Shown here: positions 17,891 to 63,904 of the stretch, piece by piece
Layout of the letters: the number at the start of each line of letters is the position of its first letter
Numbering within the stretch: the stretch's first letter is position 1
Assembly: GCA_004431415.1 (NCBI GenBank)
Contig: QPMI01000231.1
Location: 1 to 64,000, forward strand
Reading direction: 5' to 3'
Length of the DNA: 64,000 nt
Origin: Cyanophora paradoxa CCMP329
Taxonomy: Eukaryota; Plantae; Glaucophyta
Translations under genes and position numbers: made by a program
The notes under the pieces: generated by a model
The model's input: only the letters and a program-made list of their open reading frames with translations
What the model was told of the DNA's origin: nothing
Database searches by the model: none

Positions 17891-18493
17891 CACGCACTCG
17901 GGGACTCCGGGAAAGCGCGAAAGCGCGATCCCTCCCTGGTCGATTCTGCAGGGCGGCGGAAGGGTACCCTGACTCTAGTTTTACTGGTACCCTACCATGA
18001 TTACTGACTCTAACTGGTACCCCCGGCCCGCCGGGGGTTCGTCCCAGAACCCGCCGCTCCGCCCGTGGCCCCGGGGGGGAGAGGGCGCCCCCGCCCTCTC
18101 GCCTCCGCCGCCCCCGTCCTCATCGTCTTGTGTGTATGTCTCCCAAAATGTTCCAAAGCTCCATTCCAGCCAACCTTAGCTCCGCCCAGCCCCGCCTTTC
18201 GCCTTTCGCCTCCTAGACCCTCGGCTCCCTAGTAGTTGCAATTGTCAAGCGGCGAGGCTGGGGAGCTGGCGGGCTCGAGCTTGACCCTAGGCCTGGCGTC
18301 GCTTGTCAAAGGATATCTAGCTATAGACCCTAAAAAATCAACGCCGCCTCGCCGACGTCACAAAAAAATCTCTTAGAGCCATCAAAAAAAGTAATTATAT
18401 AACTTAAAGATATACAAGACCTCGATTCTCGTCTTTAAAAAATTACGATTATAATTACAACGCCTTCTGAACATCGTAACCGGAACTGAACAT

Positions 18494-22237: not shown

Positions 22238-22355
22238 GTGACTTCAAGATTGTATTGGTGCTTGAGGTAGTCCGCAAACGATATTTCCTTTTCCTTGAAG
22301 GAGAAGCTCGAAAGTGGGCTCTTTTCAAAATCAACGCCAAGAATTTCGTAAGCGA
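22238..22355 (-). pseudogene. 118-nt copy of the PAZ-coding exon inserted downstream of RIO1
   Basis: Identical to 30471-30588 except for one substitution; same orientation. Confidence 0.9.
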
Positions 22356-26168: not shown

Positions 26169-26412
26169 CTGTTGCTCTTCTCTGTGCCCGGGTTTTGATA
26201 TTTGGTCTTCTCCTAATTGGGAACACGCAGTCTCCTGAAAGCGAACGTAGTCAGCAGCTAGCGAGTATTTAACTTCATGAGCGCCAAGCCTTGAAGTGGC
26301 GTACCGCCCGAGACGAAGAGGGGGGCAAGGCCGGCGGTGAGGAGGGCGGCCTTGGCGCTTCAGCTTCTAGCTTCGCAACAAGGGGGACCTTCGGATTTTG
26401 CTTGAAGTGTTG
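26169..26412 (+). repeat. ~245-bp direct repeat, copy 1
   Basis: Highly similar to 28826-29073. Confidence 0.9.
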
Positions 26413-26595
26413 ATTTTGCTTGAGACGGGATGAGCTCTCCAGGCCGACCTCCTGCAGCTCCATCTGCTTCGAAGCCGCTCGCTAGCGCTCAAGATCTCCT
26501 GATTTCTGTTGGGCTGGCTGTGGTTGGGCTGGCAAACTAGCGTACCCATCACGTTTTGACCGATAAAGCGCGAGCTCAACGAGGCCCGCGAGGCC

Positions 26596-28461: not shown

Positions 28462-28770
28462 ATGGAGGCCGCGAACATTGCCATCGCGCCGGTCAAGGGC
28501 TTCGCAAAGGACAGCATGAGGCTGCTAAAGCGCTGCACCAAGCCTGACAGGAAAGGTGTGTTCGCGCCAGCCGCGCGACCCGCGCCTCGCGCCGCCGCTG
28601 CAAGGCGCAGCATCCCATCAGCCAGCAAAAGCGCTCAACCCGGCCCTCGCGCAGAGTTCCAGAAGATCGCTATTGCGACGAGCGTTGGCTTCGCCATCAT
28701 GGGCTTCATCGGCTTCTTTGTGAAGCTCATCCACATCCCGATCAATAACATCATCATCGGTTCCGGCTGA
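28462..28770 (+). CDS. SEC61G: Protein transport protein Sec61 gamma subunit
   Basis: [19 protein letters not shown]|[33 protein letters not shown]; intron 28556-28654. Confidence 0.97.
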
Positions 28771-28825: not shown

Positions 28826-29073
28826 CTGTTGCTCTTTCCTGTGCACGGTTTTTGCTATTTGGTCTTCTCCTAATTGGGAACAAACACGCAGTCTCCTGAA
28901 AGCGAACGTAGTCAGCAGCTAGCGCGCATTAAACTTCATGAGCGCTAAGCCTTGAAGTGGCGTACCGCCCGAGACGAAGAGGGGGGCAAGGCCGGCGGTG
29001 AGGAGGGCGGCCTTGGCGTTTCAGCTTCTAGCTTTGTAACGAGGGTGCACTTCGGATTTTGCTTCAAGTGTTG
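28826..29073 (+). repeat. ~245-bp direct repeat, copy 2
   Basis: Highly similar to 26169-26412. Confidence 0.9.
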
Positions 29074-29239
29074 CAACACTGAGCCTGTGCCCCCTGGCGT
29101 GCCTGGGGGCACAGCCGCCTGTGCATCGCCGCCTGTGAGCTCCTGTGTGCAAGGCCCCTGCCGGAAGCCTCTAGATCTCATGCCCGCCGCCTGTGCATCT
29201 CCTGCAACGCGGCTGAGCTCCAAATTACGACGAGAGGGT

Positions 29240-29565
29240 TGCGTTCAGCGTAGACAGAGCTAGCTAGCTAGCTGTGAACTACGCCTGTCTGGGTTACACA
29301 TAGGGAGGTGCGGCCCTCGCCGTTGCCGGCCCGGCCGTTCCCCCCCGAGACCCGTAAGGGGAGTAACGCTCCACCCCCGCACAGCCTAGGCCGCGCGCGT
29401 GTCGTGTGCAGCATCGCATCGCATCGATCGCGACATCTAGTCGAATCGAGGGTTGCACTTTCTAGCATTTGGATAGTGACACGAACTAAATCAAGAGTGG
29501 GGTGTACACTACGACACCGTAGCCGCGGGCCCAGCCCACTGTGCTCGCTCCTGGCTGGGCCCTCA
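29240..29565 (-). repeat. Dispersed GC-rich repeat family fragments
   Basis: 29240-29420 duplicates 17570-17750. 29495-29565 is the reverse complement of the GTGGGCTGGGCCCGCGG..GTGTACA block. Confidence 0.75.
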
Positions 29566-29909
29566 GGCCTATGCACATTGATAACACTGGCATGCAAGCT
29601 GCGGATAAACGCAAGAGCTAGAAGCGGCGGTGCTACCTACGGGGCGAGAAGCAGCGGACGACGCAGGCAGGGCCTTCTGAAGGGGGGCGTGCCCAAGCGG
29701 GGCGAGCCGCACGGGCGTAATTCTCAGGCCCCGGTAAATTGCAATTGTAAGCTTTGCTTTGCAGCCAATGTGCTTTCGAATTCCATCATGGCATGTCTGA
29801 CGGTCCCGGGTCCGGCTGATCGTAATCTTAATTGCCAGCTCGGATACGGTAATTGCCAGCTTCTGGCGCTGTACTGTACATACCACACTTGTAGCCTGGA
29901 CGTTGCGAT

Positions 29910-32900
29910 TTAAATTCGTGCCCAAATGCTCACGTGCACATTGAAACCCAACCCACCTGCACTCCGTTTCTCTCGAGTACAATTCTTTGGGCAAGAAGGG
30001 GCTACACACGGACGCCCTTGAGGTCATGATGCCTGTGGAAGGTCAAGAATTCTGGCACGAGATAGAACTCGCGCTTCGGTTTCTGTTCTTTCTTCGCTTT
30101 CGAGTTCCCCTTCTTAGCCGGCTGGGCTGGCTGCGGCTGAAGGGGGCTCTCCAACATATCACAGTCACCGATGGCAGCCCGAGCTGGGGTGACACCATGG
30201 CCAGTTAAAGTAGTCTCGCTGCCTGTTTCCTTGGTGGGCGTCCCGGAGACATTCGATTCCTCTGCATCGTGAGTGAGTGGGGCAAGCATAAAGCGAATTC
30301 GAAAAAAAGACCTGAAGTGGACAGCTCTGCAATTAAACTCGCAGCAGCTGCGGCGGACTTATCAAGCTCTGAAGGTGATTTTTTGTTGGGATTCACACAG
30401 CGAAACATTGGCTGCCTGAAAGAAAGTTAGAAGGAGCAGATTATGAAAGCGAACAACGCACTTGGGCTGCGTGACTTCAAGATTGTACTGGTGCTTGAGG
30501 TAGTCCGCAAACGATATTTCCTTTTCCTTGAAGGAGAAGCTCGAAAGTGGGCTCTTTTCAAAATCAACGCCAAGAATTTCGTAAGCGATATCTGCGGGCA
30601 AGGTAAGTCAGCCCCTATTGTCTTGTCAGAGCTTATAATTGGAACGAACTGTTCTGTTTGGCGAAAACGATGAGCCCGCAGAGCTTTTTGTTTACACTTG
30701 ATACGAAGGACTCCCACTCCGATGCAGTTGGCATGGACAGGCCACGCCCTGCATCCCACTGCACAAAAAATAAATAAATGAAGTCTACCATGCAGTAAAG
30801 AGGCACAAACCTGACGCTTCAGCTCCATAAGAACTTCGAGGCAGTTTTTGGGGGGCTCTGGTTTCGATTTCTTCTCTCGCTTCGCACGCCGCTCATCAAC
30901 ACCAGCTTCAGTCTGAAATTCGAAAAATTATGTCGAGATGGAAAAAGTATGAACCAGCACCAACCTCGGAATGGCGACGCTTTGTTGACTTCTTCGAAAT
31001 GACTGCACCAGCCTGCTGCTGCCTCTCCTTCCGTTCAACGACTTTCTCAACCTTGTTCCGAAGTCGTGCATTTGCCACCACCGATGCCCTCCGGGCAATT
31101 CTCAAAGCGGCTGAAAGCGCGGCTCGGAGTGCCCGCTTTGCGGCCGCATTGACAGCCATCTTGGGGGCTTGCCGCAGTGCTCCCGGACCACGAATTGATT
31201 TCTGCTTCTTTGCCGCTGGCAAAACAACCTGGCAAAACAGTTGAGCGATCACACAAGGTGGCGGGCAAAAGGCGCACGGTGAACTTCGTGACATGCTTTC
31301 CCAGCTTCACGCCCTTGGGTGCAGGAACGTCGCTTGGCTTGCTCCCATCAACCCCTTCAGGAGAAACAGCTGCTTCCGCCTGCCAGATCATCAGCAGGGC
31401 CATATCTGACAAACAAGGATAAAAGACCTTATTCTTCAAGGAGTTGGCGTCTCGCAAACGCTCCTTTTTCACACGACGGGCCATGCGCCGGCGAGCCTGC
31501 TTTGTATCTCCAGTATCGCCGGAAGTGCTCTTTGCAGATACACCATCGGGGGTGCTCAACGTCTCCTTGGGGCTCTCGGGTCGCGTTGCAGCAACGACGT
31601 GCTCTTCGGGCGCCGTGAGCTCCTCGTTTTGAATGTCTGAAAGGTGCCTCTTGCCGTCAATGACCATAACCTTGCCCGAAGGTTGCTTGCGGCGACGCGC
31701 AATGATGCTGCGTGCGTCCGCTGTGTTCATCTAAAGAAGGTAAGAAAGAAACATCGAAAATGAAAATCAACGACTGCACACAGGGACATCTGGCGTATCA
31801 GCAGCCTTCGCCATTTCGTCAACTAGCTTTGATGTAAGAAGGGTCGCAGACAATTTTGCAAAGAGCACGCACCCCTTGCACTCTCAACCTGCTCGGACGC
31901 AATCTTGCTGAAGCGCTCCCCAAAGCCGTGGCGAAGATTCTCGCTTGCTAAAGTGCCTCGCAAGCACACTCGACTGGGCTTGTCTTCATCAATCAGGGGG
32001 CTGCTGGTCTGCATCGCCTCAGGAGTGGTGGCCGGTGTTGACGCAACGGGGGATGAGAGAGACGCCGGAGAACCCGAGGCAACAGATGAAGAGGCGCAGG
32101 ACTCGGTCTCCATCCGCTTGGCACGCCTCTCCTTGAATGCTCCATTAAGTACTGAGTTCGACGCCAGAACTGCCTCTTCGAGAGATGCTCCCATCAACCT
32201 GAAGGAAGTAAGAGACTCTGAAAAAGACTCTGAGGAAGTAAGAGACACACTCGCCTCATCTCATTCTTGCGGCCGTCAAGTTTTTCCATCGAAGCCGTGA
32301 TAGCGCCGATCGTTTCCTGCATAGCACAATTAGTATTTTTGGTCGTGACGGAGCTGGAATTGAATTATGAAGAAAAGAACTCAGAACTCACGGCAACGCG
32401 GGCGAGGCATGCAGGTGCGATAGCGGCCCCGCTGATCGAGCACGTAGCTGCCCAGTCGTTGATATTTTCAGCAGCGGAAAGGGACAGCGCCAGCGCTCGG
32501 ATCGATTCCAGCGCCTGCAAGATCTCGGAGGCAAAGGCCTGTGCGAACGAGAGGCAGTCCCCAAAAGCGAGGGCAAGCTGCCGCGCCTCCTCGCCGGAGG
32601 GAGCTTGGTTGCTAGCCGCGACCGCGTCGCGGGTGTCCTGTAGGAGGTCCGCCACCCGCCAGAGTCGCCGGATCCCGTATTTCATACATGAAACGAGCGG
32701 GCTGTGGAGCCGTAAGCGTAACACAAGCGCAGGGTCTGAAACCCTGAAGTCTAATCGTACGCGGGCGTGGCGCTCTGCGTACCACTTCAGACCGTCGAAG
32801 GCTTGTCGCTTCAGGCGCATGTGAGCGCGCGCGGCGCTTGTCGTGCTGGCGCGGCGTGCAGGCTCCTCCAAAGCGAGGACGGCGGCCTCGGTTTTGCAGA

Positions 32901-33121
32901 AAGTGTCTTGCACCTCGCAGAGAGCCCGCACCTTCAAAAAGAAGAAGAGTCTGAGACCAACCCAGCCGTACGTTTTTGACGACACAAACCCGCACCTTCC
33001 AGACGCAGAAAACGCCCGCGATCTGAACCAAAGGAAGCTTGGAGTCGTCGGCCGGCGTGTCGAGGGCAGGAGCCGAAAGGGCGGGCGCGTGGGGCAGCGC
33101 CGAGACCTCGAGCTCGGCCAT
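29910..33121 (-). CDS. PAZ-domain protein (Piwi-type PAZ at C-terminus, no MID/PIWI or RNase III)
   Basis: Spliced SVNKKLCGLIVFAKQNNIAYEILGVDFEKSPLSSFSFKEKEISFADYLKHQYNLEVTQPKQPMF...EFYLVPEFLTF. The helical N-terminal part joins in frame through a 50-nt intron 31823-31872 (SARV-DEMAK). Stop at 29910, or 30002 if the last GC-AG intron is not used. Confidence 0.75.
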
Positions 33122-34086
33122 CGTTTTCACGGTGTTGAAAAGCGAAAGTGGCGGGAGTTCTCGGGGGGGATCTGGCTAGGAGGGGTATAGCGTCCGGGTC
33201 TGCGAAGCAAGCCGAGCGGTATCCTGCGGCGTTATCCTGCGGCGGCATCCTGCGGCGGTCGATCTCAGCGCAGCAAGCCGGGGCCAGAGCTAAGGATGCT
33301 CGACTGAGGCGAGGACCGCATGCTGTCGAAACACTCGCCCGCACTCGCCTGCCAGTATGAGTGCTCAAGGAGTGGCAGGGGTCGAGCCGCAAACGCCGCC
33401 GGCGGCTCAGCGGCCTGGTTCGCATCTGGTTCTCGGGAGCCTCGCGTCGAGGTTGATTTCGCGGGTCGTAGCTCACTGACCCGTGTGTCTTCGCAGTTGA
33501 ATGCCCTGCAGCGCCAAGAAAGCGGCGCTTGCCTGCGCCTTCTTCCCCTCGGAGGCATGCAGAGGGCGGCTTTCGCAAACTCGATTGTGCGCTGGACCCC
33601 ATGGCCTGCGGCCCCCCTCCGTCCTTTTCTTTCGTTTTTCTGATACTTTTGCAGTCTCCTCGATACCTGTCGCACCGCCGGAACCACTCAACACGAACAG
33701 CCCTCGCTCTGCGTCGTCGCCTCCTCCAACTCCCACCCCTCCCGCTCGAAACCTCCCGCTCTCCACCGCGCTTCATTCGCCGAACTCGGCGAGTGTTGCG
33801 CTTGCGGGACACCCGGAGCCCGAGGCACTTCCACCACCCTCCGCGACGCCATCGCGCTCCAGGCAGCTCCGCGGCTTTCGGTAGTCCCTCGAAGGCCTTC
33901 GTCTGAGCGGCCCCGGCGCTTCTAAGCGCCCCGTCTCTGCAGGAAATCCCAGAATCGATTGCTCTTGTAGTGTTCGCCTGTAAGAATCGATTGTATAGTA
34001 AATATTGCGCGGGGCATTCCTGCGTTCCAAAATCGATTGCGATCTTTGTCGCCCGTGTAGTTCTTCATGTAACTAGGAAGCAGACT

Positions 34087-53062: not shown

Positions 53063-56000
53063 ATGGCCGGCGGTGCAATTCAGATGAGGGACATCGCGAT
53101 GGCCGTCCCCGACGACCGGTGCGCGCAGTCTTCTCTTTGCGCAGAGTTGCATAGTCGAACGCGCACTCTACAGGTACACGGCAGGAAACGCCGTGGGCGC
53201 CATGCGGCGGTCGGTGGAGGTGCGATAGCGCAATCGCTTGCAACGCTGCGAGTCTTGAGGGTCGCGCAGCTCCAGCAGATGCGCCGATCGATCGAAATGG
53301 GGGGCCGCAGAAGCATCGAAATGGTTTTTTCTTTCGTTCTTGCCCTTTTCCCTGCTGTTCCAACTCTTTTCTTGCAGGCCGCGAAGGCGGCTGGTGACCG
53401 GAGGGCGAGCATCCAGATGCAGGACCCAGCGATGCGTGCTCAGACACAGGAGAACATTCGCCGCTCCATCGATCTGGTGCGCAGTTGGTCGTGCTGGCAC
53501 TTGCCCACGGGCCCCTCATCGTCAAAACAGATCGCCAAGGCGCAAGAAGTGAAGCAGAAGACAGAGGCGGCGGCGCAGGCGGCGAAGGAGGGGAAAAAGG
53601 TAGAGGCGAAGGTATGCGGTTGGGCGCGGCGGGACAGGGCGCGGGGCGGCGGGGGCGCTGAGCGGGGGCGGGGCGGCAGGACAAGCCGCCGGTGCCGGAG
53701 GTGGACGACCACCAGATTCCGATGGAGGAGCTGTGCCGGCGCTACGAGACGGACCTCGAGCGCGGCCTCACGCAGGCCACCTTCCAGGCACACCTCCAGC
53801 AGTACGGGCCCAACGCCCTCACCCCGGCCAAAGTCACCCCGCAGGCCCGCCCGCCCCGCCCCGCCTCGCCCAGCCCAGCCCCGCCCCTCTGACCAGGCGC
53901 GCAGTGGGTCAAGTGCGTGGGTCGTTCGCTGCGGTTGGACGGCGGCTGAGCGGGGCGCAGGTGGCTGATGCAGATGGTGACGCCGTTCGCAATCATCATG
54001 TGGATCGCCGCCGTGCTGTGCTTTATCGGCTACAGCCTCGACCGCCACGCCACCGACAACGTGCGACCGCCCTACTCGCCCGCTCCCCAGCTCCCCCCGC
54101 CGGTCGCATCGGAGGGCCCGTGCGGCGCGCCGGGCAGGAACCGACGGGCGGCGCAGATCATCCTGGCCATCGCCCTCATCATCGTTATCTTCGCGACGGG
54201 CACCTTCGCCTGGTACCAGGTCCGCGGGGCGGGCGCGGGGCGGGGTGCGGGGCCCGAGGCGCGGGCGGGGCGCAGGAGAAGCAGTCCGGGGCGATCATGG
54301 ACAACTTCACGAAGATGCTCCCGACGATGGCGCGCGTCGTCCGTGACGGCCGCAAGGAGGGTGCGACCGGCAGGGGAGCGCCGGCGGGGCCGGCGTGACG
54401 GCCCGGCAGACGTCGACGCGGTGCAGCTCGTGCCGGGCGACATCGTCGAGGTGCTCGCCGGGCAGAAGATCCCTGCCGGTGCGCCCCGCCGCCGTCCCGC
54501 CCCGTTCCGCCGCGCTGACGACCCCGCGCAGACATCCGCATCGTCGAGGTGCGGGGGCTGGGCCGGAGCGGGCTCCGGCCGGGGCGCCGACGGGGGCTAA
54601 CGGGAGGCGGCAGGCGGCGAACTTCAAGGTGGACAACAGCTCGCTGACGGGGGAGACGGAGCCGCAGAGCCGCAGCAAGGACTGCACCGACCCGAACATC
54701 TTCGAGACGAAGAACCTGGCCTTCTTCTCGACGCTGGCCGTGGAGGGGACGTGCAAGGGCGTCGTCGTCTTCACGGGCGACCGCACGCTGATCGGCAAGA
54801 TCGCGTCGCTGGCGAGCGGCGAGAACATGGAGAAGCGCAAGAGCCCGATCGCGCACGAGATCCACAACTTCGTGATCATCATCGGCATCGTCGCCTTTGC
54901 CCTGGGCATCATCTTCTTCGGGGTGGGCTTCAAGGTGTACGGCTCGGGCAAGGTGATCGAGATCATCGTGCTGTCGATCGGCATCATCGTGGCGAACGTG
55001 CCGGAGGGCCTGCCGGCGACGGTGACGATGTGCCTGACGCACGCCGCGCACACGATGGCAAGCAAGAACGTCCTCGTCAAGTCCCTCGAGGCCGTCGAGA
55101 CCCTCGGCTCCACCTCCACCATCTGCTCCGGTGCCGCCCCCCGGCCCCGCCCGAGCCGGCGCCCGTCGAGCGCGACGCGCAGACAAGACGGGGACCCTGA
55201 CGCAGAACCGCATGACCGTCGGTGCGGGCGGCGCGCGAGGGGCGCGCAAGGGCGCTGACGCGCGCCGCAGTGAAGCTCTTCTACGGGCTGAAGCAGTGGC
55301 GCACGACGGACGACTTCGACCAGTCGATCGAGAAGTTCAGCACGAGCGACGCGGCGTTCCAGATGGTGCACAAGGTCATGTGCCTCGGCTCCAAGGCGGT
55401 CTTCAACCCGGACCCGGAGAACATGACGAAGCCGATCTTCGAGCGCCTCACCTTCGGCGACGCCACCGAGTCCGCCATGATCAAGTTCTGTGAGAGCATC
55501 CGCAACATCGAGGACGTGCGCCGGCCCCTCGCCTCGCGCGCCCGCGCCGGCCAACGCTGGGCCCCGGCAGCACCGCGCCGAGTACCCGAAGATCATGGAG
55601 CTGGCGTTCAACAGCAAGAACAAGTTCGCGCTGTCGATCCACGAGGACCCGAAGGCGGACCGCCGCTTCCTCGTCATGAAGGGCGCCCCGGAGCGCATCA
55701 TTGACCGCTGCAACCGCTTCATGCAGGCGGACGGCTCCGTCATCCCCATGACCGCCGACATCAAGCGGCAGCTCAACGAGAACAACGAGAACCTGGGCGG
55801 GCAGGGCATGCGCGTCCTCGGCCTGGTGCGCGGGGCCGTCGGGCGCCCCGGCGGCTCCAGCGGGGCCTGACGGGGCGGGGGCAGTGCTATGAGAACCTGG
55901 ACCCGATGACGTACACGAAGGACTACGTGTTCGACGTGGAGCAGGGCAACTACCCGATGGACAACATGATCTTCGCGGGGCTCGCCGCCCTCATCGACCC

Positions 56001-57988
56001 CCCCAAGGAGACCGTCCCCTTCGCCGTCGCCAAGTGCCAGGGCGCCGGCATCAAGGTCATCATGGTCACCGGTGCGCCGCCGCGAGGTGGGGGGCGGCGC
56101 GCGGGGGCCGAGGCGCGCGCAGGCGACCACCCCGTGACGGCGGCGGCCATCGCGCGCGAGGTGGGCATCATCAAGGGCGACACGAAGGAGTCGATCGCCA
56201 AGCGCCGCGGCTGCCGCCCCGAGGAGGTCAAGGAGAACGTGCCAGCCATCGGTGCGGCGGCGGCGCGCGCGGGGGGCGCTGGAGCGTCCTGAGCGGGGCG
56301 GGGCCGGCGCAGTGATTGCGGGGACGCAAATCGCCGACTTCAAGGATTCGGACTGGGACTTCGTGCTGGGGCACCCCGAGATCGTCTTCGCGCGCACGAC
56401 CCCCGAGCAAAAGCTCATCATCGTCGACGAGAATCAGAAGCGCGGAGCCATCGTCGCCGTCGTGCGCCCGCCGCCGCGCGCGCGGCCGCCGGAGGGTTGA
56501 GGGGCGCGGCGGGGCAGACGGGCGACGGCGTGAACGACTCGCCGGCGCTGAAGAAGGCGGACATCGGGGTGGCGATGGGGATCAGCGGGTCGGACGTGTC
56601 GAAGGAGGCGGCGAAGATGGTGCTGCTGGACGACAACTTCGCGTCGATCGTGGTGGGCGTCGAGGAGGGCCGCATCATCTTCGACAACCTCAAGAAGTCC
56701 ATCGCGTACACCCTCGAGCACCTGGGCGCCGAGGTCGTCCCCTACCTCATATCCTTCATCGCCGAGATCCCGCTCCCCATCACCACCATCCTCATCCTCG
56801 CCATCGACCTCGTGCGCGCCCCCGGCCCGCACGCGGCCCGCCGGTCCCGAGCCAGGGCGCAGGGCACGGACATCTTCCCCGCCATCTCCTTCGCCTACGA
56901 GAACGTGCGTGGGGCGGGGCGGGCGGCTGCGGGGCGCGCGGGGGCCCTGACCGGCGGGCGGCAGGCGGAGAGCGACATCATGCTGCGGCCGCCGCGCAAC
57001 CCGAAGGTGGACCGCCTCGCCGGCTGGCGCCTCTACCTCTACGCCTACTTCGTGACCGGCGTCGTCATCCTCGGCGGCACCCTCTTCACCTACTTCATCG
57101 TCTTGATCGACCACGGGTTCCAGACTTCCAAGCTGATGGGCGTTGCGGCGAACTGGAAGGAGGACAAGTGGCCCGTCGAGATTCTCTGCAACAAGCCAAG
57201 TGCGGAGAACAAGGAGGATTTCGAGAAGTACTGCACGCCTGACTGCAGGTTCCCCGACACGGCGGACGGCTGGACGTTCGCGCCCATGAACTCGACCTTT
57301 GTCAAGCCCGTCAACGGCAGCCTCGCTGCCTACAAGTGCGAGCTGCCCCACGGCGCGACCGTCTTCCAGTCCCCCTGGATGGTGCCGCCCCGCCACGCGC
57401 CCACCCGCCTGCTTCATCGCACCTCACTTGTCCCTCAGAATCCCGAGTACCGGCACTACACGCAGCGGGTGGTGAACACGGCGGTCTGGTTCTCGATCGT
57501 GATGGGCCAGTGGGGCGGCATCGTCGCATGCAAGACCCGCAAGCTCTCCGTCTTCACGCAGGGCATGAAGGTGCGCCGCCGCCGCCCTGCCTGACCGCGC
57601 GATGCCAGCGCCTGAGCCCAACCCAGAACGCGTTCATGAACTATTGCCTCCTCTTCGAGGTCGCCCTCTCGGTCTTCCTCATCTACACGCCCGGCATCCA
57701 AGAGGGTGCGCGCGGCCTTCTCCATACGCGCGTATGCATGCACGCCGGCCGCCTGTTAACGCTGGCCATGGCTCCCCACCAGTCTTCGGGACGGCCAACC
57801 TCAACATCAAGTTCTGGTTCACCAGCGCGCCGTTCGCGCTCTGGCTCATCGTCGTCGACGAGATTCGCAAGTGGGAGATCCGCCGCAGTGCGTTCCATCC
57901 CACGTAAATCCCTCCACCCACGCTCCGCTTACGAATCCGCATGGCGATAGATCCCGAAGGCTGGATCGCCTTCTGCACGTACTACTGA
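53063..57988 (+). CDS. P-type IIC (Na+/K+-ATPase alpha-like) ATPase, copy A
   Basis: [96 protein letters not shown]; C-terminal TYY*. Confidence 0.97.
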
Positions 57989-60900
57989 GCACGAGTCGGC
58001 TGTGGTTTTTCCGACCATATAGGCGGCAGATCTAGAACGTCGAACCAGTATCGCACATTAGGAATACGCGACTCGTGTGCGATGCGGATCTAGATTCCTT
58101 TCCGAGTTCAACAAGAGATCTAGAACCAGAAACAACGTCAACGTTTCAACGGCATTGTAGTTGTAGCCTTCAGATCTAGATAGAAATTAGGACGCCTCAC
58201 TTTTTTCTATTTCAAGCTTCCCAGCTGCAGCCCGGGCCTTTGGCAGCTATGACTGCAGCTGCAGTTCATTTCACATGTGCGATTCAGTATCATTCATTGA
58301 TATGGCGTTTCGATATCTAGATTTGCGAAAATTCACAGAACTGAACCTGACAGAATCCTCATCACTGAGTCATGGCATATGCATGGCATTGAATCGGCAA
58401 AAACGTTTAACTCGTGACTCAGTGACTGCCGCAGCCTGGCAGTGCCGCGTGACTGCCGCGCGCCGCGGCAGCATGCATGCATATGCCGCAGTGCGCACGG
58501 CTCATGCTAACCAAAACCCGGGACCGTCGGACCGTCATGATCACACACGGCGTCGGACCTGCTCCTACTAGGCCCTGAGGCTAGGCCTGCAGCTGTCATG
58601 ATCACCGGCACTGTACATGTGGCACTCAGTGACTGCCGTTGATATTGCAATCACAATGTACTGCGATGCGTACTAGTTCTCGTCACTAAGACTGCCACTG
58701 AACTTCGGAACATGTAAGTTGACAAAGTGAGCGACATATTCAGCCCCTTGGCGGCACAAAATTCAACGACAGCTATAGCTAGCGCTGTGGGTTGCGCCCG
58801 GCGGCCGGCGCGCGGGGCTCATGATCAGCGCCGCCGGCTGTGCCGAATCAAGATCTAGAGACCTGAGACAACGTGCACGCCATCACTATAGATCTAGATT
58901 GCAATTGGGATCCCCGGATGGCGGGGCTACGCCACTGGGCCAGCAGTACTTGTAGCGATGCCCCTGCCCAAGGCTCCCTAGGCCTTGGACCGTCGGACTG
59001 TGCAATATAAACCTTTCCCAAATATCTTGCATGATCAGTAGTACGTGCAGAAGGCGATCCAGCCTTCGGGATCTATCGCCATGCGGATTCGTTAGCGGAG
59101 CGTGGGTGGAGGGATTTACGTGGGATGAAACGCACTGCGGCGGATCTCCCACTTGCGAATCTCATCGACAAAGATGAGCCAGAGCGCGAACGGCGCGCTG
59201 GTGAACCAGAACTTGATGTTGAGGTTGGTCGTCCCGAAGACTGCGGGAAGTTGACGTCAACGGGCGGCCGTCAAAGTTGACGTGAGCGCGACTGTGTGGA
59301 AGGCCACGTGGATGCGCATGCGCACTGTCTTGGATGCCGGGCGTGTAGATGAGGAAGACCGAGAGGGCGACCTCGAAGAGGAGGCAATAGTTCATGAACG
59401 CGTTCTGGGCCGGGCTCAGGCGCTGGCATCGCGCGGTCAGGCAGGGCGGCTGTGGCGCACCTTCATGCCCTGCGTGAAGACGGAGAGCTTGCGGGTCTTG
59501 CATGCGACGATGCCGCCCCACTGGCCCATCACGATCGAGAACCAGACCGCAGTGTTCACCACCCGCTGCGTGTAGGCCCGGTACTCGGGATACTGCCATG
59601 ACGTGAAGGGCTGGCCCGGCTTGGCGCAGTACTTCTCTGCCTCGGACGCATCGTAACCCGCTGCCGCCTTGTCGCACACGGGCCAGTTATCGTCCTTCCA
59701 CTTGGCCGCCACGCCCGACAGCTTGGAGATCTCGAACCCGTGGTCGATGAAGACGATGAAGTAGGTGAAGAGGGTGCCGCCGAGGATGACGACGCCGGTC
59801 ACGAAGTAGGCGTAGAGGTAGAGGCGCCAGCCGGCGAGGCGGTCCACCTTCGGGTTGCGCGGCGGCCGCAGCATGATGTCGCTCTCCGCCTGCCGCCCGC
59901 CGGTCAGGGCCCCCGCGCGCCCCGCAGCCGCCCGCCCCGCCCCACGCACGTTCTCGTAGGCGAAGGAGATGGCGGGGAAGATGTCCGTGCCCTGCGCCCT
60001 GGCTCGGGACCGGCGGGCCGCGTGCGGGCCGGGGGCGCGCACGAGGTCGATGGCGAGGATGAGGATGGTGGTGATGGGGAGCGGGATCTCGGCGATGAAG
60101 GATATGAGGTAGGGGACGACCTCGGCGCCCAGGTGCTCGAGGGTGTACGCGATGGACTTCTTGAGGTTGTCGAAGATGATGCGGCCCTCCTCGACGCCCA
60201 CCACGATCGACGCGAAGTTGTCGTCCAGCAGCACCATCTTCGCCGCCTCCTTCGACACGTCCGACCCGCTGATCCCCATCGCCACCCCGATGTCCGCCTT
60301 CTTCAGCGCCGGCGAGTCGTTCACGCCGTCGCCCGTCTGCCCCGCCGCGCCCCTCAACCCTCCGGCGGCCGCGCGCGCGGCGGCGGGCGCACGACGGCGA
60401 CGATGGCTCCGCGCTTCTGGTTCTCGTCGACGATGATGAGCTTCTGCTCGGGGGTCGTGCGCGCGAAGACGATCTCGGGGTGCCCCAGCACGAAGTCCCA
60501 GTCCGAATCCTTGAAGTCGGCGATTTGCGTCCCCGCAATCACTGCGCCGGCCCCGCCCCGCTCAGGACGCTCCAGCGCCCCCCGCGCGCGCCGCCGCCGC
60601 ACCGATGGCTGGCACGTTCTCCTTGACCTCCTCGGGGCGGCAGCCGCGGCGCTTGGCGATCGACTCCTTCGTGTCGCCCTTGATGATGCCCACCTCGCGC
60701 GCGATGGCCGCCGCCGTCACGGGGTGGTCGCCTGCGCGCGCCTCGGCCCCCGCGCGCCGCCCCCCACCTCGCGGCGGCGCACCGGTGACCATGATGACCT
60801 TGATGCCGGCGCCCTGGCACTTGGCGACGGCGAAGGGGACGGTCTCCTTGGGGGGGTCGATGAGGGCGGCGAGCCCCGCGAAGATCATGTTGTCCATCGG

Positions 60901-63250
60901 GTAGTTGCCCTGCTCCACGTCGAACACGTAGTCCTTCGTGTACGTCATCGGGTCCAGGTTCTCATAGCACTGCCCCCGCCCCGTCAGGCCCGCTGGAGCC
61001 GCCGGGGCGCCCGACGGCCCCGCGCACCAGGCCGAGGACGCGCATGCCCTGCCCGCCCAGGTTCTCGTTGTTCTCGTTGAGCTGCCGCTTGATGTCGGCG
61101 GTCATGGGGATGACGGAGCCGTCCGCCTGCATGAAGCGGTTGCAGCGGTCAATGATGCGCTCCGGGGCGCCCTTCATGACGAGGAAGCGGCGGTCCGCCT
61201 TCGGGTCCTCGTGGATCGACAGCGCGAACTTGTTCTTGCTGTTGAACGCCAGCTCCATGATCTTCGGGTACTCGGCGCGGTGCTGCCGGGGCCCAGCGTT
61301 GGCCGGCGCGGGCGCGCGAGGCGAGGGGCCGGCGCACGTCCTCGATGTTGCGGATGCTCTCACAGAACTTGATCATGGCGGACTCGGTGGCGTCGCCGAA
61401 GGTGAGGCGCTCGAAGATCGGCTTCGTCATGTTCTCCGGGTCCGGGTTGAAGACCGCCTTGGAGCCGAGGCACATGACCTTGTGCACCATCTGGAACGCC
61501 GCGTCGCTCGTGCTGAACTTCTCGATCGACTGGTCGAAGTCGTCCGTCGTGCGCCACTGCTTCAGCCCGTAGAAGAGCTTCACTGCGGCGCGCGTCAGCG
61601 CCCTTGCGCGCCCCTCGCGCGCCGCCCGCACCGACGGTCATGCGGTTCTGCGTCAGGGTCCCCGTCTTGTCTGCGCGTCGCGCTCGACGGGCGCCGGCTC
61701 GGGCGGGGCCGGGGGGCGGCACCGGAGCAGATGGTGGAGGTGGAGCCGAGGGTCTCGACGGCCTCGAGGGACTTGACGAGGACGTTCTTGCTCGCCATCG
61801 TGTGCGCGGCGTGCGTCAGGCACATCGTCACCGTCGCCGGCAGGCCCTCCGGCACGTTCGCCACGATGATGCCGATCGACAGCACGATGATCTCGATCAC
61901 CTTGCCCGAGCCGTACACCTTGAAGCCCACCCCGAAGAAGATGATGCCCAGGGCAAAGGCGACGATGCCGATGATGATCACGAAGTTGTGGATCTCGTGC
62001 GCGATCGGGCTCTTGCGCTTCTCCATGTTCTCGCCGCTCGCCAGCGACGCGATCTTGCCGATCAGCGTGCGGTCGCCCGTGAAGACGACGACGCCCTTGC
62101 ACGTCCCCTCCACGGCCAGCGTCGAGAAGAAGGCCAGGTTCTTCGTCTCGAAGATGTTCGGGTCGGTGCAGTCCTTGCTGCGGCTCTGCGGCTCCGTCTC
62201 CCCCGTCAGCGAGCTGTTGTCCACCTTGAAGTTCGCCGCCTGCCGCCTCCCGTTAGCCCCCGTCGGCGCCCCGGCCGGAGCCCGCTCCGGCCCAGCCCCC
62301 GCACCTCGACGATGCGGATGTCTGCGCGGGGTCGTCAGCGCGGCGGAACGGGGCGGGGACGGCGGCGGGGCGCACCGGCAGGGATCTTCTGCCCGGCGAG
62401 CACCTCGACGATGTCGCCTGGCACGAGCTGCACCGCGTCGACGTCTGCCGGGCCGTCACGCCGGCCCCGCCGGCGCTCCCCTGCCGGTCGCACCCTCCTT
62501 GCGGCCGTCACGGACGACGCGCGCCATCGTCGGGAGCATCTTCGTGAAGTTGTCCATGATCGCCCCGGACTGCTTCTCCTGCGCCCCGCCCGCGCCTCGG
62601 GCCCCGCACCCCGCCCCGCGCCCGCCCCGCGGACCTGGTACCAGGCGAAGGTGCCCGTCGCGAAGATAACGATGATGAGGGCGATGGCCAGGATGATCTG
62701 CGCCGCCCGTCGGTTCCTGCCCGGCGCGCCGCACGGGCCCTCCGATGCGACCGGCGGGGGTAAGTATTGAAGTGGGGCCGGCGCACGTTGTCAGTGGCGT
62801 GGCGGTCAAGGCCGTAGCCGATAAAGCACAGCACGGCGGCGATCCACATGATGATCGCGAACGGCGTCGTCATCTGCATCAGCCACCTGCGCCCCGCTCA
62901 GCCGCCGCCGACCCGCGGCGCGCGACCAACGCACTTGACCCACTGCGCGCCTGGTCAGAGGGACGGGGCTGGGCGGGGCGAGGCGGGGCGGGGCGGGGCG
63001 GGGCGGGCGGGCCTGCGGGGTGACTTTGGCCGGGGTGAGGGCGTTGGGCCCGTACTGCTGGAGGTGTGCCTGGAAGGTGGCCTGCGTGAGGCCGCGCTCG
63101 AGGTCCGTCTCGTAGCGCCGGCACAGCTCCTCCATCGGAATCTGGTGGTCGTCCACCTCCGGCACCGGCGGCTTGTCCTGCCGCCCCGCCCCCGCTCAGC
63201 GCCCCCGCCGCCCCGCGCCCTGTCCCGCCGCGCCCAACCGCATACCTTCT
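53610..63250. repeat. Large inverted duplication (arms ~53610-57988 and ~59035-63250, ~1.05 kb spacer)
   Basis: Exons and introns are almost identical between arms over most of their length. Confidence 0.95.
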
Positions 63251-63904
63251 TTCCCTCTTTCGCCGCCTGCGCCGCTGCCTCTTGCTTCGCGATCTCTGCC
63301 TTCTGCTTCAGCTCTTGCGCCTTCGCGATCTGCGGCGACGTAGACGCTCGGAGGAGGCCCGCAGCGTCGCTTCGGGGCGCCACGCACGAGATCGATCGAC
63401 TTGCGGACGTTTTCGTGGGCCTGCGCCCTCGCTGCCGGGTCCTGCATCTGGACGCTCGCCCGCCGGTCGCCGGCCGCCTTTGCGGCCTGGCAGAGCTTGG
63501 TGACGAGAGGCATGCGCGCAAGGAAAAGGAGAGTTTGCCGCGAACCATTTCGATGCTTTTCCTACCGCCTTGATCGACAGATCGGCGGATCTGCTGCAAC
63601 TGCGCGATTGTGAGAGTCGCGACTCTTCAAACCATGAAGCGCCGCAAACGAGCGCCGCCGCACCTCCACTGACCGCCGAATGGCTCCCACAGCGTTTCCA
63701 GCCGTGTACCTGCGCGTCCGGCGTTCGATTGTGCGGCCTCGGGGCGCTTCAATCGAAAGCTTAGCTCCCGGGCGCGCTCCGCGAAAAAGGCCAGTGGCGA
63801 CCGGGCTCAGTGCCCTAAAGACATGCACGCACTTCGCACCTTTCATCGGGCATGATCGCTAAACCCACTTCTTGCATCTGAATTTGCTTCGTCGGTTCCG
63901 CCAT
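59035..63904 (-). CDS. P-type IIC (Na+/K+-ATPase alpha-like) ATPase, copy B
   Basis: Same motifs on the minus strand; ATG 63904 ([14 protein letters not shown]), ends TYY* at 59035. Confidence 0.96.

What the first reader, a model, noticed from the sequence alone, without database searches (positions are those of the whole stretch)
29910..33121. Stand-alone Piwi-type PAZ protein in an alga
Seen: after splicing, the C-terminal exons read SVNKKLCGLIVFAKQNNIAYEILGVDFEKSPLSSF..EISFADYLKHQYNLEVTQPKQPMF...YLVPEF, and the gene stops shortly after. Knowledge: this follows the Piwi-clade PAZ pattern (LxGxxVxTxYNNxxYxIxxIDxxxxPxxxF...SFxxYxxxxYNxxIxxxxQP...LxPE) better than AGO PAZ; PAZ binds small-RNA 3' ends; land plants have AGO but not Piwi proteins. 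No MID, PIWI or RNase III follows. The N-terminus is a helical region plus a long basic disordered linker, and the PAZ carries a long low-complexity insertion between QPM and YLVPE. Inference: a non-slicing small-RNA 3'-end reader or adaptor derived from Piwi, possibly part of an undescribed silencing branch.
Basis: partly seen in the sequence, partly recalled or inferred. Interest (0 to 1): 0.8.

Follow-up and report, generated by a model that had tools for sequence, protein, structure and literature searches.

The report
Lone Piwi-type PAZ protein in Cyanophora
The alga Cyanophora paradoxa expresses a gene that carries only the RNA-end-gripping PAZ domain of a Piwi silencing protein, attached to an unrelated front part, and so may encode a non-cutting helper of its small-RNA system; RNA binding is untested and no relative was found in any other species.

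Summary
Confirmed. This is a spliced minus-strand gene (ATG 33121, stop 30002) of Cyanophora paradoxa (EukProt tig00000980_g6135). Contigs from four studies show its introns removed. The mRNA gives a 795-aa protein whose only recognisable domain is a PAZ at aa ~582-787 (Pfam E 2e-14). The PAZ is Piwi-type: PDB best hits are Piwi PAZ (E 1e-12), with no AGO hit to E 10. Homology starts at the first PAZ helix and stops after the last strand. No N, L1, L2, MID, PIWI or RNase III match occurs in the protein. AlphaFold, given no alignment for the last strand, closes the fold with the distal FYLVPEF across a ~90-aa loop. Caveats: Piwi in Cyanophora is already in published supplements (a full-length PIWI-clade protein with its own PAZ). 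This PAZ is worn: 12 of 27 conserved columns are kept, but the two aromatics shown to matter for binding remain. No orthologue was found. Best reading (~50%): a non-slicing RNA 3'-end reader or adaptor derived long ago from Piwi. Earlier scan notes describe Piwi and Dicer oddities elsewhere in this genome, but not this gene.

The parts
29618..33180 (-). Whole transcript as assembled from RNA contigs (15 exons, 14 coding; 795-aa ORF)
32996..33121 (-). Coding exon 1 (ATG at 33121; in-frame stop upstream), aa 1-42
32255..32931 (-). Coding exons 2-4 (32931-32783, 32701-32392, 32316-32255), aa 43-216: orphan, predicted ordered, Ala/Leu/Cys-containing region with no family, PDB or Piwi match; the following intron 32199-32254 is GC-AG
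30913..32198 (-). Coding exons 5-9 (32198-31873, 31822-31782, 31730-31428, 31379-31278, 31228-30965), aa 216-561: Ser/Pro-rich then strongly basic, largely disordered linker with NLS-like K/R clusters
30811..30912 (-). Exon 10, aa 562-595; aa 582-595 (30852-30811) match the first PAZ helix of Piwis (TVLD-type)
   Evidence: best window in the protein, per-window p 7e-5
30650..30758 (-). Exon 11, aa 596-632: PAZ helix and first strand
30462..30591 (-). Exon 12, aa 632-675: PAZ core with pocket aromatics Y635, F650, Y662, Y667
30312..30415 (-). Exon 13, aa 675-710: QPMF strand, then the start of the long insertion (predicted helix 689-708)
30002..30261 (-). Coding part of exon 14, aa 710-795: low-complexity insertion, last PAZ strand (aa 774-783 at 30070-30041), stop
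29618..30001 (-). 3' UTR with one intron (29896-29956); its distal part lies in what appears to be a multi-copy repeat
22238..22355 (-). 118-bp copy of the PAZ core exon (one change from 30471-30588), just behind the RIO1-like gene and beside a dispersed repeat; not part of the gene

Best explanation
An old duplicate of a Piwi-clade Argonaute kept only its PAZ module, cut at both domain borders. That module now forms the C-terminus of an otherwise unrelated, expressed 795-aa protein. Shown: the gene, its splicing, the open frame, Piwi-type PAZ homology and the absence of other Argonaute or Dicer domains. Predicted: a complete PAZ fold. Inferred: the PAZ pocket grips the last two nucleotides of single-stranded or overhanging RNA 3' ends, probably weakly and without sequence specificity. 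The basic disordered linker adds non-specific phosphate contacts and possibly nuclear import. The orphan N-terminal region recruits a partner. Without MID it cannot anchor a guide 5' end, and without PIWI it cannot cut. It would therefore act as an end-reader, protector or adaptor in the alga's small-RNA system, not as an effector.
For: Spliced in four studies, with 13 frame-keeping coding introns and the UTR intron only 45 nt after the stop. Pfam PAZ E 2e-14. PDB: Piwi PAZ 51.5 bits, HrAgo1 17.7, Dicer 16, no AGO to E 10. The only other big-search hits are PAZ pieces of full protist Piwi genes. A profile of 26 full-length Piwis matches only the PAZ, in the protein and in all six frames of the 64 kb. 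The first helix and last strand are both the top-scoring windows of the protein, so the whole module was kept. AF2 core pLDDT 88-96, with the distal strand docked at about 80 without alignment help; Z 14.5, rmsd 1.6 over 94 residues to Hili PAZ. Y635 and F650 match, by spacing, Aedes Piwi4 Y40 and F55, whose mutation reduced or abolished binding (PMC8657434). The PAZ is only 19/61 identical to the alga's own published Piwi PAZ (counted by eye) and has a long branch, yet the frame is intact, which argues for selection. The alga has abundant 21-nt small RNAs plus Dicer, Argonaute and RdRP homologues (PMC3700990).
Against: The PAZ is worn. It scores 61 bits against a leave-one-out median of 106 (range 36-118) and keeps 12 of 27 conserved columns, against 13-27 in true Piwis (reference set biased, chosen by one PIWI motif). 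The conserved T-R-Y-N-N-K-T-Y-R strand has lost one Tyr and two basic residues (Lys to Ile, Arg to Glu), and the YY pair is YL. There is no orthologue, so no dN/dS. The N-terminal 580 aa have no known function. No protein-level or binding data exist.
Confidence: 0.5

Rival explanations
1. The PAZ is kept as a folded protein-interaction or structural module and no longer binds RNA; the protein has left small-RNA biology.
For: Core and fold residues are kept (G623, P646, Q676, P677), while the basic and aromatic residues of the RNA-facing strand are changed. The 90-aa loop could carry new interactions.
Against: Four pocket aromatics remain (Y635, F650, Y662, Y667), including both residues tested in AePiwi4. 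The large basic linker suits nucleic-acid binding.
Confidence: 0.2
2. An expressed but dispensable relic: a chimera of a Piwi PAZ fragment and local sequence, in a genome where gene pieces are copied around, now drifting.
For: It is an orphan with one database member. The PAZ is degenerate. The window shows short copies of genic DNA at new places, including this very exon. An unchecked scan note describes gene-capturing elements in this genome.
Against: A 795-codon open frame across 13 canonical introns. About 30-40% identity to any Piwi seen, which is too old for a neutral sequence to stay open. No close PAZ donor among annotated proteins of 423-1345 aa. Homology ends exactly at both domain borders. 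A recent origin from an unannotated paralogue is not excluded.
Confidence: 0.18
3. Half of a split silencing machine: the protein supplies a PAZ in trans to a PAZ-less, slicer-dead PIWI or to a PAZ-less Dicer-like nuclease of the same genome, as the prokaryotic AfAgo is completed by a separate N-L1-L2 protein.
For: Unchecked scan notes report slicer-dead PIWI stretches of 1.6-1.7 kb and Dicer-like genes of unusual architecture in this genome. Precedent for split Argonautes: PMC10954474.
Against: The one C. paradoxa Piwi I could read is complete with its own PAZ. This protein lacks the N, L1 and L2 parts that make the interface in split pAgos. No partner gene is nearby. I could not fetch the noted genes to see whether they lack PAZ.
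Confidence: 0.12

Closest known systems
PAZ domain of PIWI-clade Argonautes (HIWI/PIWIL1, HILI, MIWI, Drosophila Piwi; protist Piwis)
   Same: Same fold (Z 13.5-14.5; 33-35% structural identity). Same motif order from first helix to last strand. Pocket aromatics kept. The insertion sits at the place of the variable Piwi-specific PAZ insertion (site as described in PMC8657434; position matched by my alignment).
   Different: No N, L1, L2, MID or PIWI. About 95 residues between QP and the last strand, against roughly 8-26 in the Piwis aligned. The T-R-Y-N-N-K-T-Y-R strand is degenerate. An unrelated 580-aa N-terminus.
C. paradoxa full-length Piwi EP00741_17219 (Bastiaanssen et al. 2024 supplement)
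   Same: Same organism, PIWI clade. Its PAZ core aligns without gaps over 61 residues (by eye).
   Different: Only 19/61 identical (human HIWI is 25/61). It has all domains, RG-rich N-terminal repeats and a D-E-D-H tetrad, and keeps 19 of the 27 conserved PAZ columns (by eye) against 12 here.
AGO-clade and Dicer PAZ
   Same: Same fold (Z 10-12).
   Different: Only 12-25% identity. No AGO sequence hit to E 10; Dicer E 0.07. No RNase III or helicase in the protein.
Split or short prokaryotic Argonautes (AfAgo + AfAgo-N, PMC10954474)
   Same: Argonaute modules encoded on a separate polypeptide.
   Different: The partner there is N-L1-L2 and lacks PAZ, and it is encoded in the same operon. No prokaryotic or viral relative was found by pattern scans.
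Short 'PAZ domain-containing' database clusters, mostly nematode (ESM Atlas)
   Same: Predicted proteins of 119-204 aa annotated with PAZ alone exist.
   Different: They are short and may be fragments; I could not check. None shows a long unrelated N-terminus, and I found no study of them.

Membership tests
PAZ domain (PF02170) | Profile score above the curated cut-off | tested here: met
   54.1 bits vs 28.8; 30.1 bits on one exon alone
PAZ domain (PF02170) | Complete PAZ fold including the last strand | tested here: met
   AF2 model and VIA Z 14.5, 94 aligned residues, model range 1-180; prediction only, and the alignment used was Piwi-only
PAZ domain (PF02170) | Intact aromatic 3'-end pocket | tested here: inconclusive
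   Y635, F650, Y662, Y667 kept; Tyr to Gln at 630, Tyr to Leu at 663, Arg to Glu at 636
PAZ domain (PF02170) | Binds RNA 3' ends | not testable with these tools
   needs a binding assay
Piwi-type rather than AGO- or Dicer-type PAZ | Closer to Piwi PAZ in competitive sequence and structure comparison | tested here: met
   nearest library hits are protist Piwi genes
Piwi-type rather than AGO- or Dicer-type PAZ | Groups with Piwi in a tree that includes AGO and Dicer PAZ | tested here: inconclusive
   No AGO or Dicer sequences could be fetched. The Piwi-only tree is unresolved and the query branch is 3.0 changes per column
PIWI-clade Argonaute protein | N, L1, L2, MID and PIWI domains | tested here: not met
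   The full-length Piwi profile finds only PAZ in the protein and the 64-kb window; the mRNA ends in a UTR and only 1232 bp remain before the convergent Sec61-gamma stop
Dicer | RNase III domains | tested here: not met
   Pfam finds only PAZ in the protein
Pseudogene | Broken frame or no spliced transcript | tested here: not met
   795-codon open frame, spliced in four studies
Split Argonaute (AfAgo-N type) | A partner MID-PIWI protein lacking this module, and a complex with it | not testable with these tools
   partner genes known only from unchecked notes

The most novel reading that the evidence does not exclude
The protein is a dedicated trans-acting 3'-end module of a modular, eukaryotic split Piwi or Dicer system in glaucophytes. 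It lends a PAZ to a PAZ-less non-slicing PIWI or to a PAZ-less Dicer-like enzyme, an arrangement I know only from prokaryotic Argonautes.
Probability: 0.12. Interest if true: 0.85.

Novelty: new variant of a known kind. Interest (0 to 1): 0.5.

Why it matters
In eukaryotes the PAZ domain is known almost only as a part of Argonaute, Piwi and Dicer proteins (established knowledge; my ten literature searches found no characterised PAZ-only protein, though most subscription journals are not covered). A verified, expressed gene that keeps a whole Piwi PAZ and nothing else shows that the module can be reused alone. It gives a small, easily expressed test object for how RNA 3' ends are read outside an Argonaute. 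It also adds to the picture of a Piwi-containing small-RNA toolkit in a deep archaeplastid lineage; land plants lack Piwi. The value is limited for now: one species, no orthologue, a worn pocket and no functional data.

Tried and rejected
Truncated gene model or missed MID/PIWI exons: rejected. AGO or Dicer origin: disfavoured. Remnant Piwi N/L1 in the N-terminus: no match (hhalign probability 0.1%). Alternative last strand at canonical spacing (aa 699-708; MAFFT put it there): it scores 9.4 against 18.4 for the distal one, where true Piwis score 15.4 or more, and AF2 makes it a helix. Rejected, though it may be a worn remnant.

Searches with no relative: word search on the PAZ exon, on the PAZ region and on the N-terminal region; Atlas on exon 3; NCBIfam, PHROGs and PDB on the N-terminus; pattern scans of viral, metagenome and prokaryotic contigs. 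These have low sensitivity: the 42-aa big search did not even reach animal Piwis, so absence of orthologues is weakly shown. Single-sequence AF2 failed (pLDDT 38). The tree was uninformative. Tian et al. 2011 was not readable, so HIWI residue roles come from PMC8657434 and my own alignment.

Searches used exon references or the stored database protein P0001. The RNA-based joined model was built from window coordinates inside scripts and used only locally, for numbering, composition and comparison with my own Piwi alignment. The published C. paradoxa Piwi has no reference here, so I did not type it in and compared it by eye only.

Full report
Setting. The window starts with 7 kb of TTAGGG-type telomere. 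The gene's product is in EukProt as Cyanophora paradoxa tig00000980_g6135.t1, a one-member cluster, so the organism is the glaucophyte C. paradoxa. The gene lies on the minus strand. Its neighbours are a convergent Sec61-gamma gene (stop at 28770; Pfam SecE) and a small divergent gene starting near 33357.

Observation. Contigs from four independent studies lack the introns and give the same joints. All introns resolve to GT-AG except one GC-AG, and are 46-81 nt long. Three joints near the 3' end were not printed; I derived them from the contig coordinates, and they agree with the public model. The mRNA gives a 795-aa ORF from 33121 to 30002, then a 3' UTR with one intron 45 nt past the stop. 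The public 769-aa model differs only by removing aa 487-512, which the contigs retain. No variants were seen in the coding region in these runs.

The PAZ. Pfam finds PAZ and nothing else (54 bits, E 2e-14). Against PDB sequences the best 17 hits are all Piwi (top E 9e-13), then Asgard HrAgo1 (0.02) and Dicer (0.07); no eukaryotic AGO appears to E 10. The 1.8-billion-protein search with the 42-aa core exon returned the protein itself and two fragments. Both fragments belong to full Piwi genes of AT-rich protists, one in ciliate code. I collected 26 full-length Piwi ORFs from metagenomes with a PIWI motif. Their profile matches only the PAZ of the protein. In all six frames of the window it matches only the PAZ exon and its stray copy at 22.3 kb, and hhalign finds nothing in aa 1-605 when these are tested alone. 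Homology begins with the first PAZ helix at aa 582-595 (best window in the protein, p 7e-5 per window). It ends with the last strand at aa 774-783 (score 18.4, within the range of true Piwis, p 2e-5). The L1 strand before it and the L2 start after it are gone, so the module is excised at its borders. About 95 residues separate QP from the last strand, where Piwis have a short variable insertion. To test this without bias I gave AlphaFold an alignment that stopped before the insertion. It built the core at pLDDT 88-96, left the middle of the loop disordered and docked the distal FYL as a strand at about 80. The model superposes on Hili PAZ with Z 14.5, rmsd 1.6 over 94 residues. AGO and Dicer PAZ give Z 10-12 with 12-25% identity, against 33-35% for Hili and Hiwi. 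The alignment was Piwi-only, so the Z ranking is not independent; the sequence ranking is.

State of the pocket. Y635 and F650 sit at the same 15-residue spacing as Aedes Piwi4 Y40 and F55. F55A abolished binding there and Y40A reduced it (PMC8657434). Y662 and Y667 are kept too. But only 12 of 27 columns conserved in at least 70% of my Piwis are kept (true Piwis keep 13-27), and the core scores 61 bits against a leave-one-out median of 106. The losses cluster in the strand around the intron at 30592-30649 and include two basic residues. Binding is therefore plausible but probably weaker or altered.

The rest of the protein. Aa 1-245 are predicted ordered and neutral, aa 246-410 Ser/Pro-rich and slightly acidic, and aa 411-590 disordered with net charge +32 and several NLS-like clusters. 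There are no GW motifs and only three RG pairs. No family, PDB, Atlas or word-search match was found.

Context from the literature. C. paradoxa makes mostly 21-nt exonic small RNAs and has Dicer, Argonaute and four RdRP homologues (PMC3700990). A 'piwi-like protein 1' (tig00020510_g9829) is listed in the Price 2019 supplement. The Bastiaanssen 2024 supplement holds a full-length C. paradoxa protein in the PIWI clade, with PAZ and a D-E-D-H tetrad. By eye its PAZ core is 19/61 identical to ours, less than human HIWI (25/61). Ours is therefore not a recent copy of that gene, and Piwi in this alga is not new. I found no paper on this gene or on any characterised PAZ-only eukaryotic protein. The Atlas does list short PAZ-only predicted clusters, mostly nematode, which may be fragments.

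Mechanism and verdict. Shown: a real, spliced, intact gene with a complete Piwi-type PAZ and no other Argonaute or Dicer part. Inferred: old duplication from a Piwi, retention under selection, and a role as a non-cutting 3'-end reader or adaptor, possibly nuclear (0.5). Rivals are a PAZ that no longer binds RNA (0.2), an expressed relic (0.18), and a trans-acting half of a split Piwi or Dicer (0.12). The last was suggested by unchecked scan notes on slicer-dead PIWI and odd Dicer genes elsewhere in the genome, which I could not fetch. It is not a member of the Piwi protein family, since MID and PIWI were tested and are absent, but its PAZ is Piwi-derived. Novelty: new variant of a known kind. 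Interest 0.5.

Procedure note. 

Noticed in passing
window 22238-22355: Near-exact (117/118) copy of most of the PAZ core exon, right behind the stop of the RIO1-like kinase gene and beside a dispersed repeat. If the RIO1 3' UTR covers it, it would be transcribed antisense to the PAZ mRNA and could yield dsRNA; not checked with reads.
   Followed up: partly
window 18364-18439, 26169-26506, 28826-29073, 29176-29421: Several short copies of nearby genic or intergenic DNA at new places (e.g. 35 bp of RIO1 coding sequence at 18405; 248 bp shared by 26169 and 28826), suggesting local capture by mobile elements.
   Followed up: partly
window 33357-33884 (+): Divergent neighbour: a spliced three-exon gene for a roughly 126-aa Pro/Ser-rich protein with a TP site followed by a CPAAPRK motif. 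From memory this recalls SIAMESE-related CDK inhibitors of plants; no Pfam hit on two pieces. A lead only.
   Followed up: partly
window 29618-29896: The 3' UTR of the PAZ gene runs into what appears to be a multi-copy repeat (extra contigs and loose ends).
   Followed up: no
window 53149-63734: Two inverted copies, about 4 kb at 94% identity, of a P-type cation ATPase gene.
   Followed up: no
window 1-7120: About 7 kb telomere tract of CCCTAA with frequent variant units; the PAZ gene lies about 23 kb from its inner end.
   Followed up: no
window 30965-31228: The public gene model predicts a 78-nt intron inside this exon that the RNA contigs of four studies do not show.
   Followed up: yes
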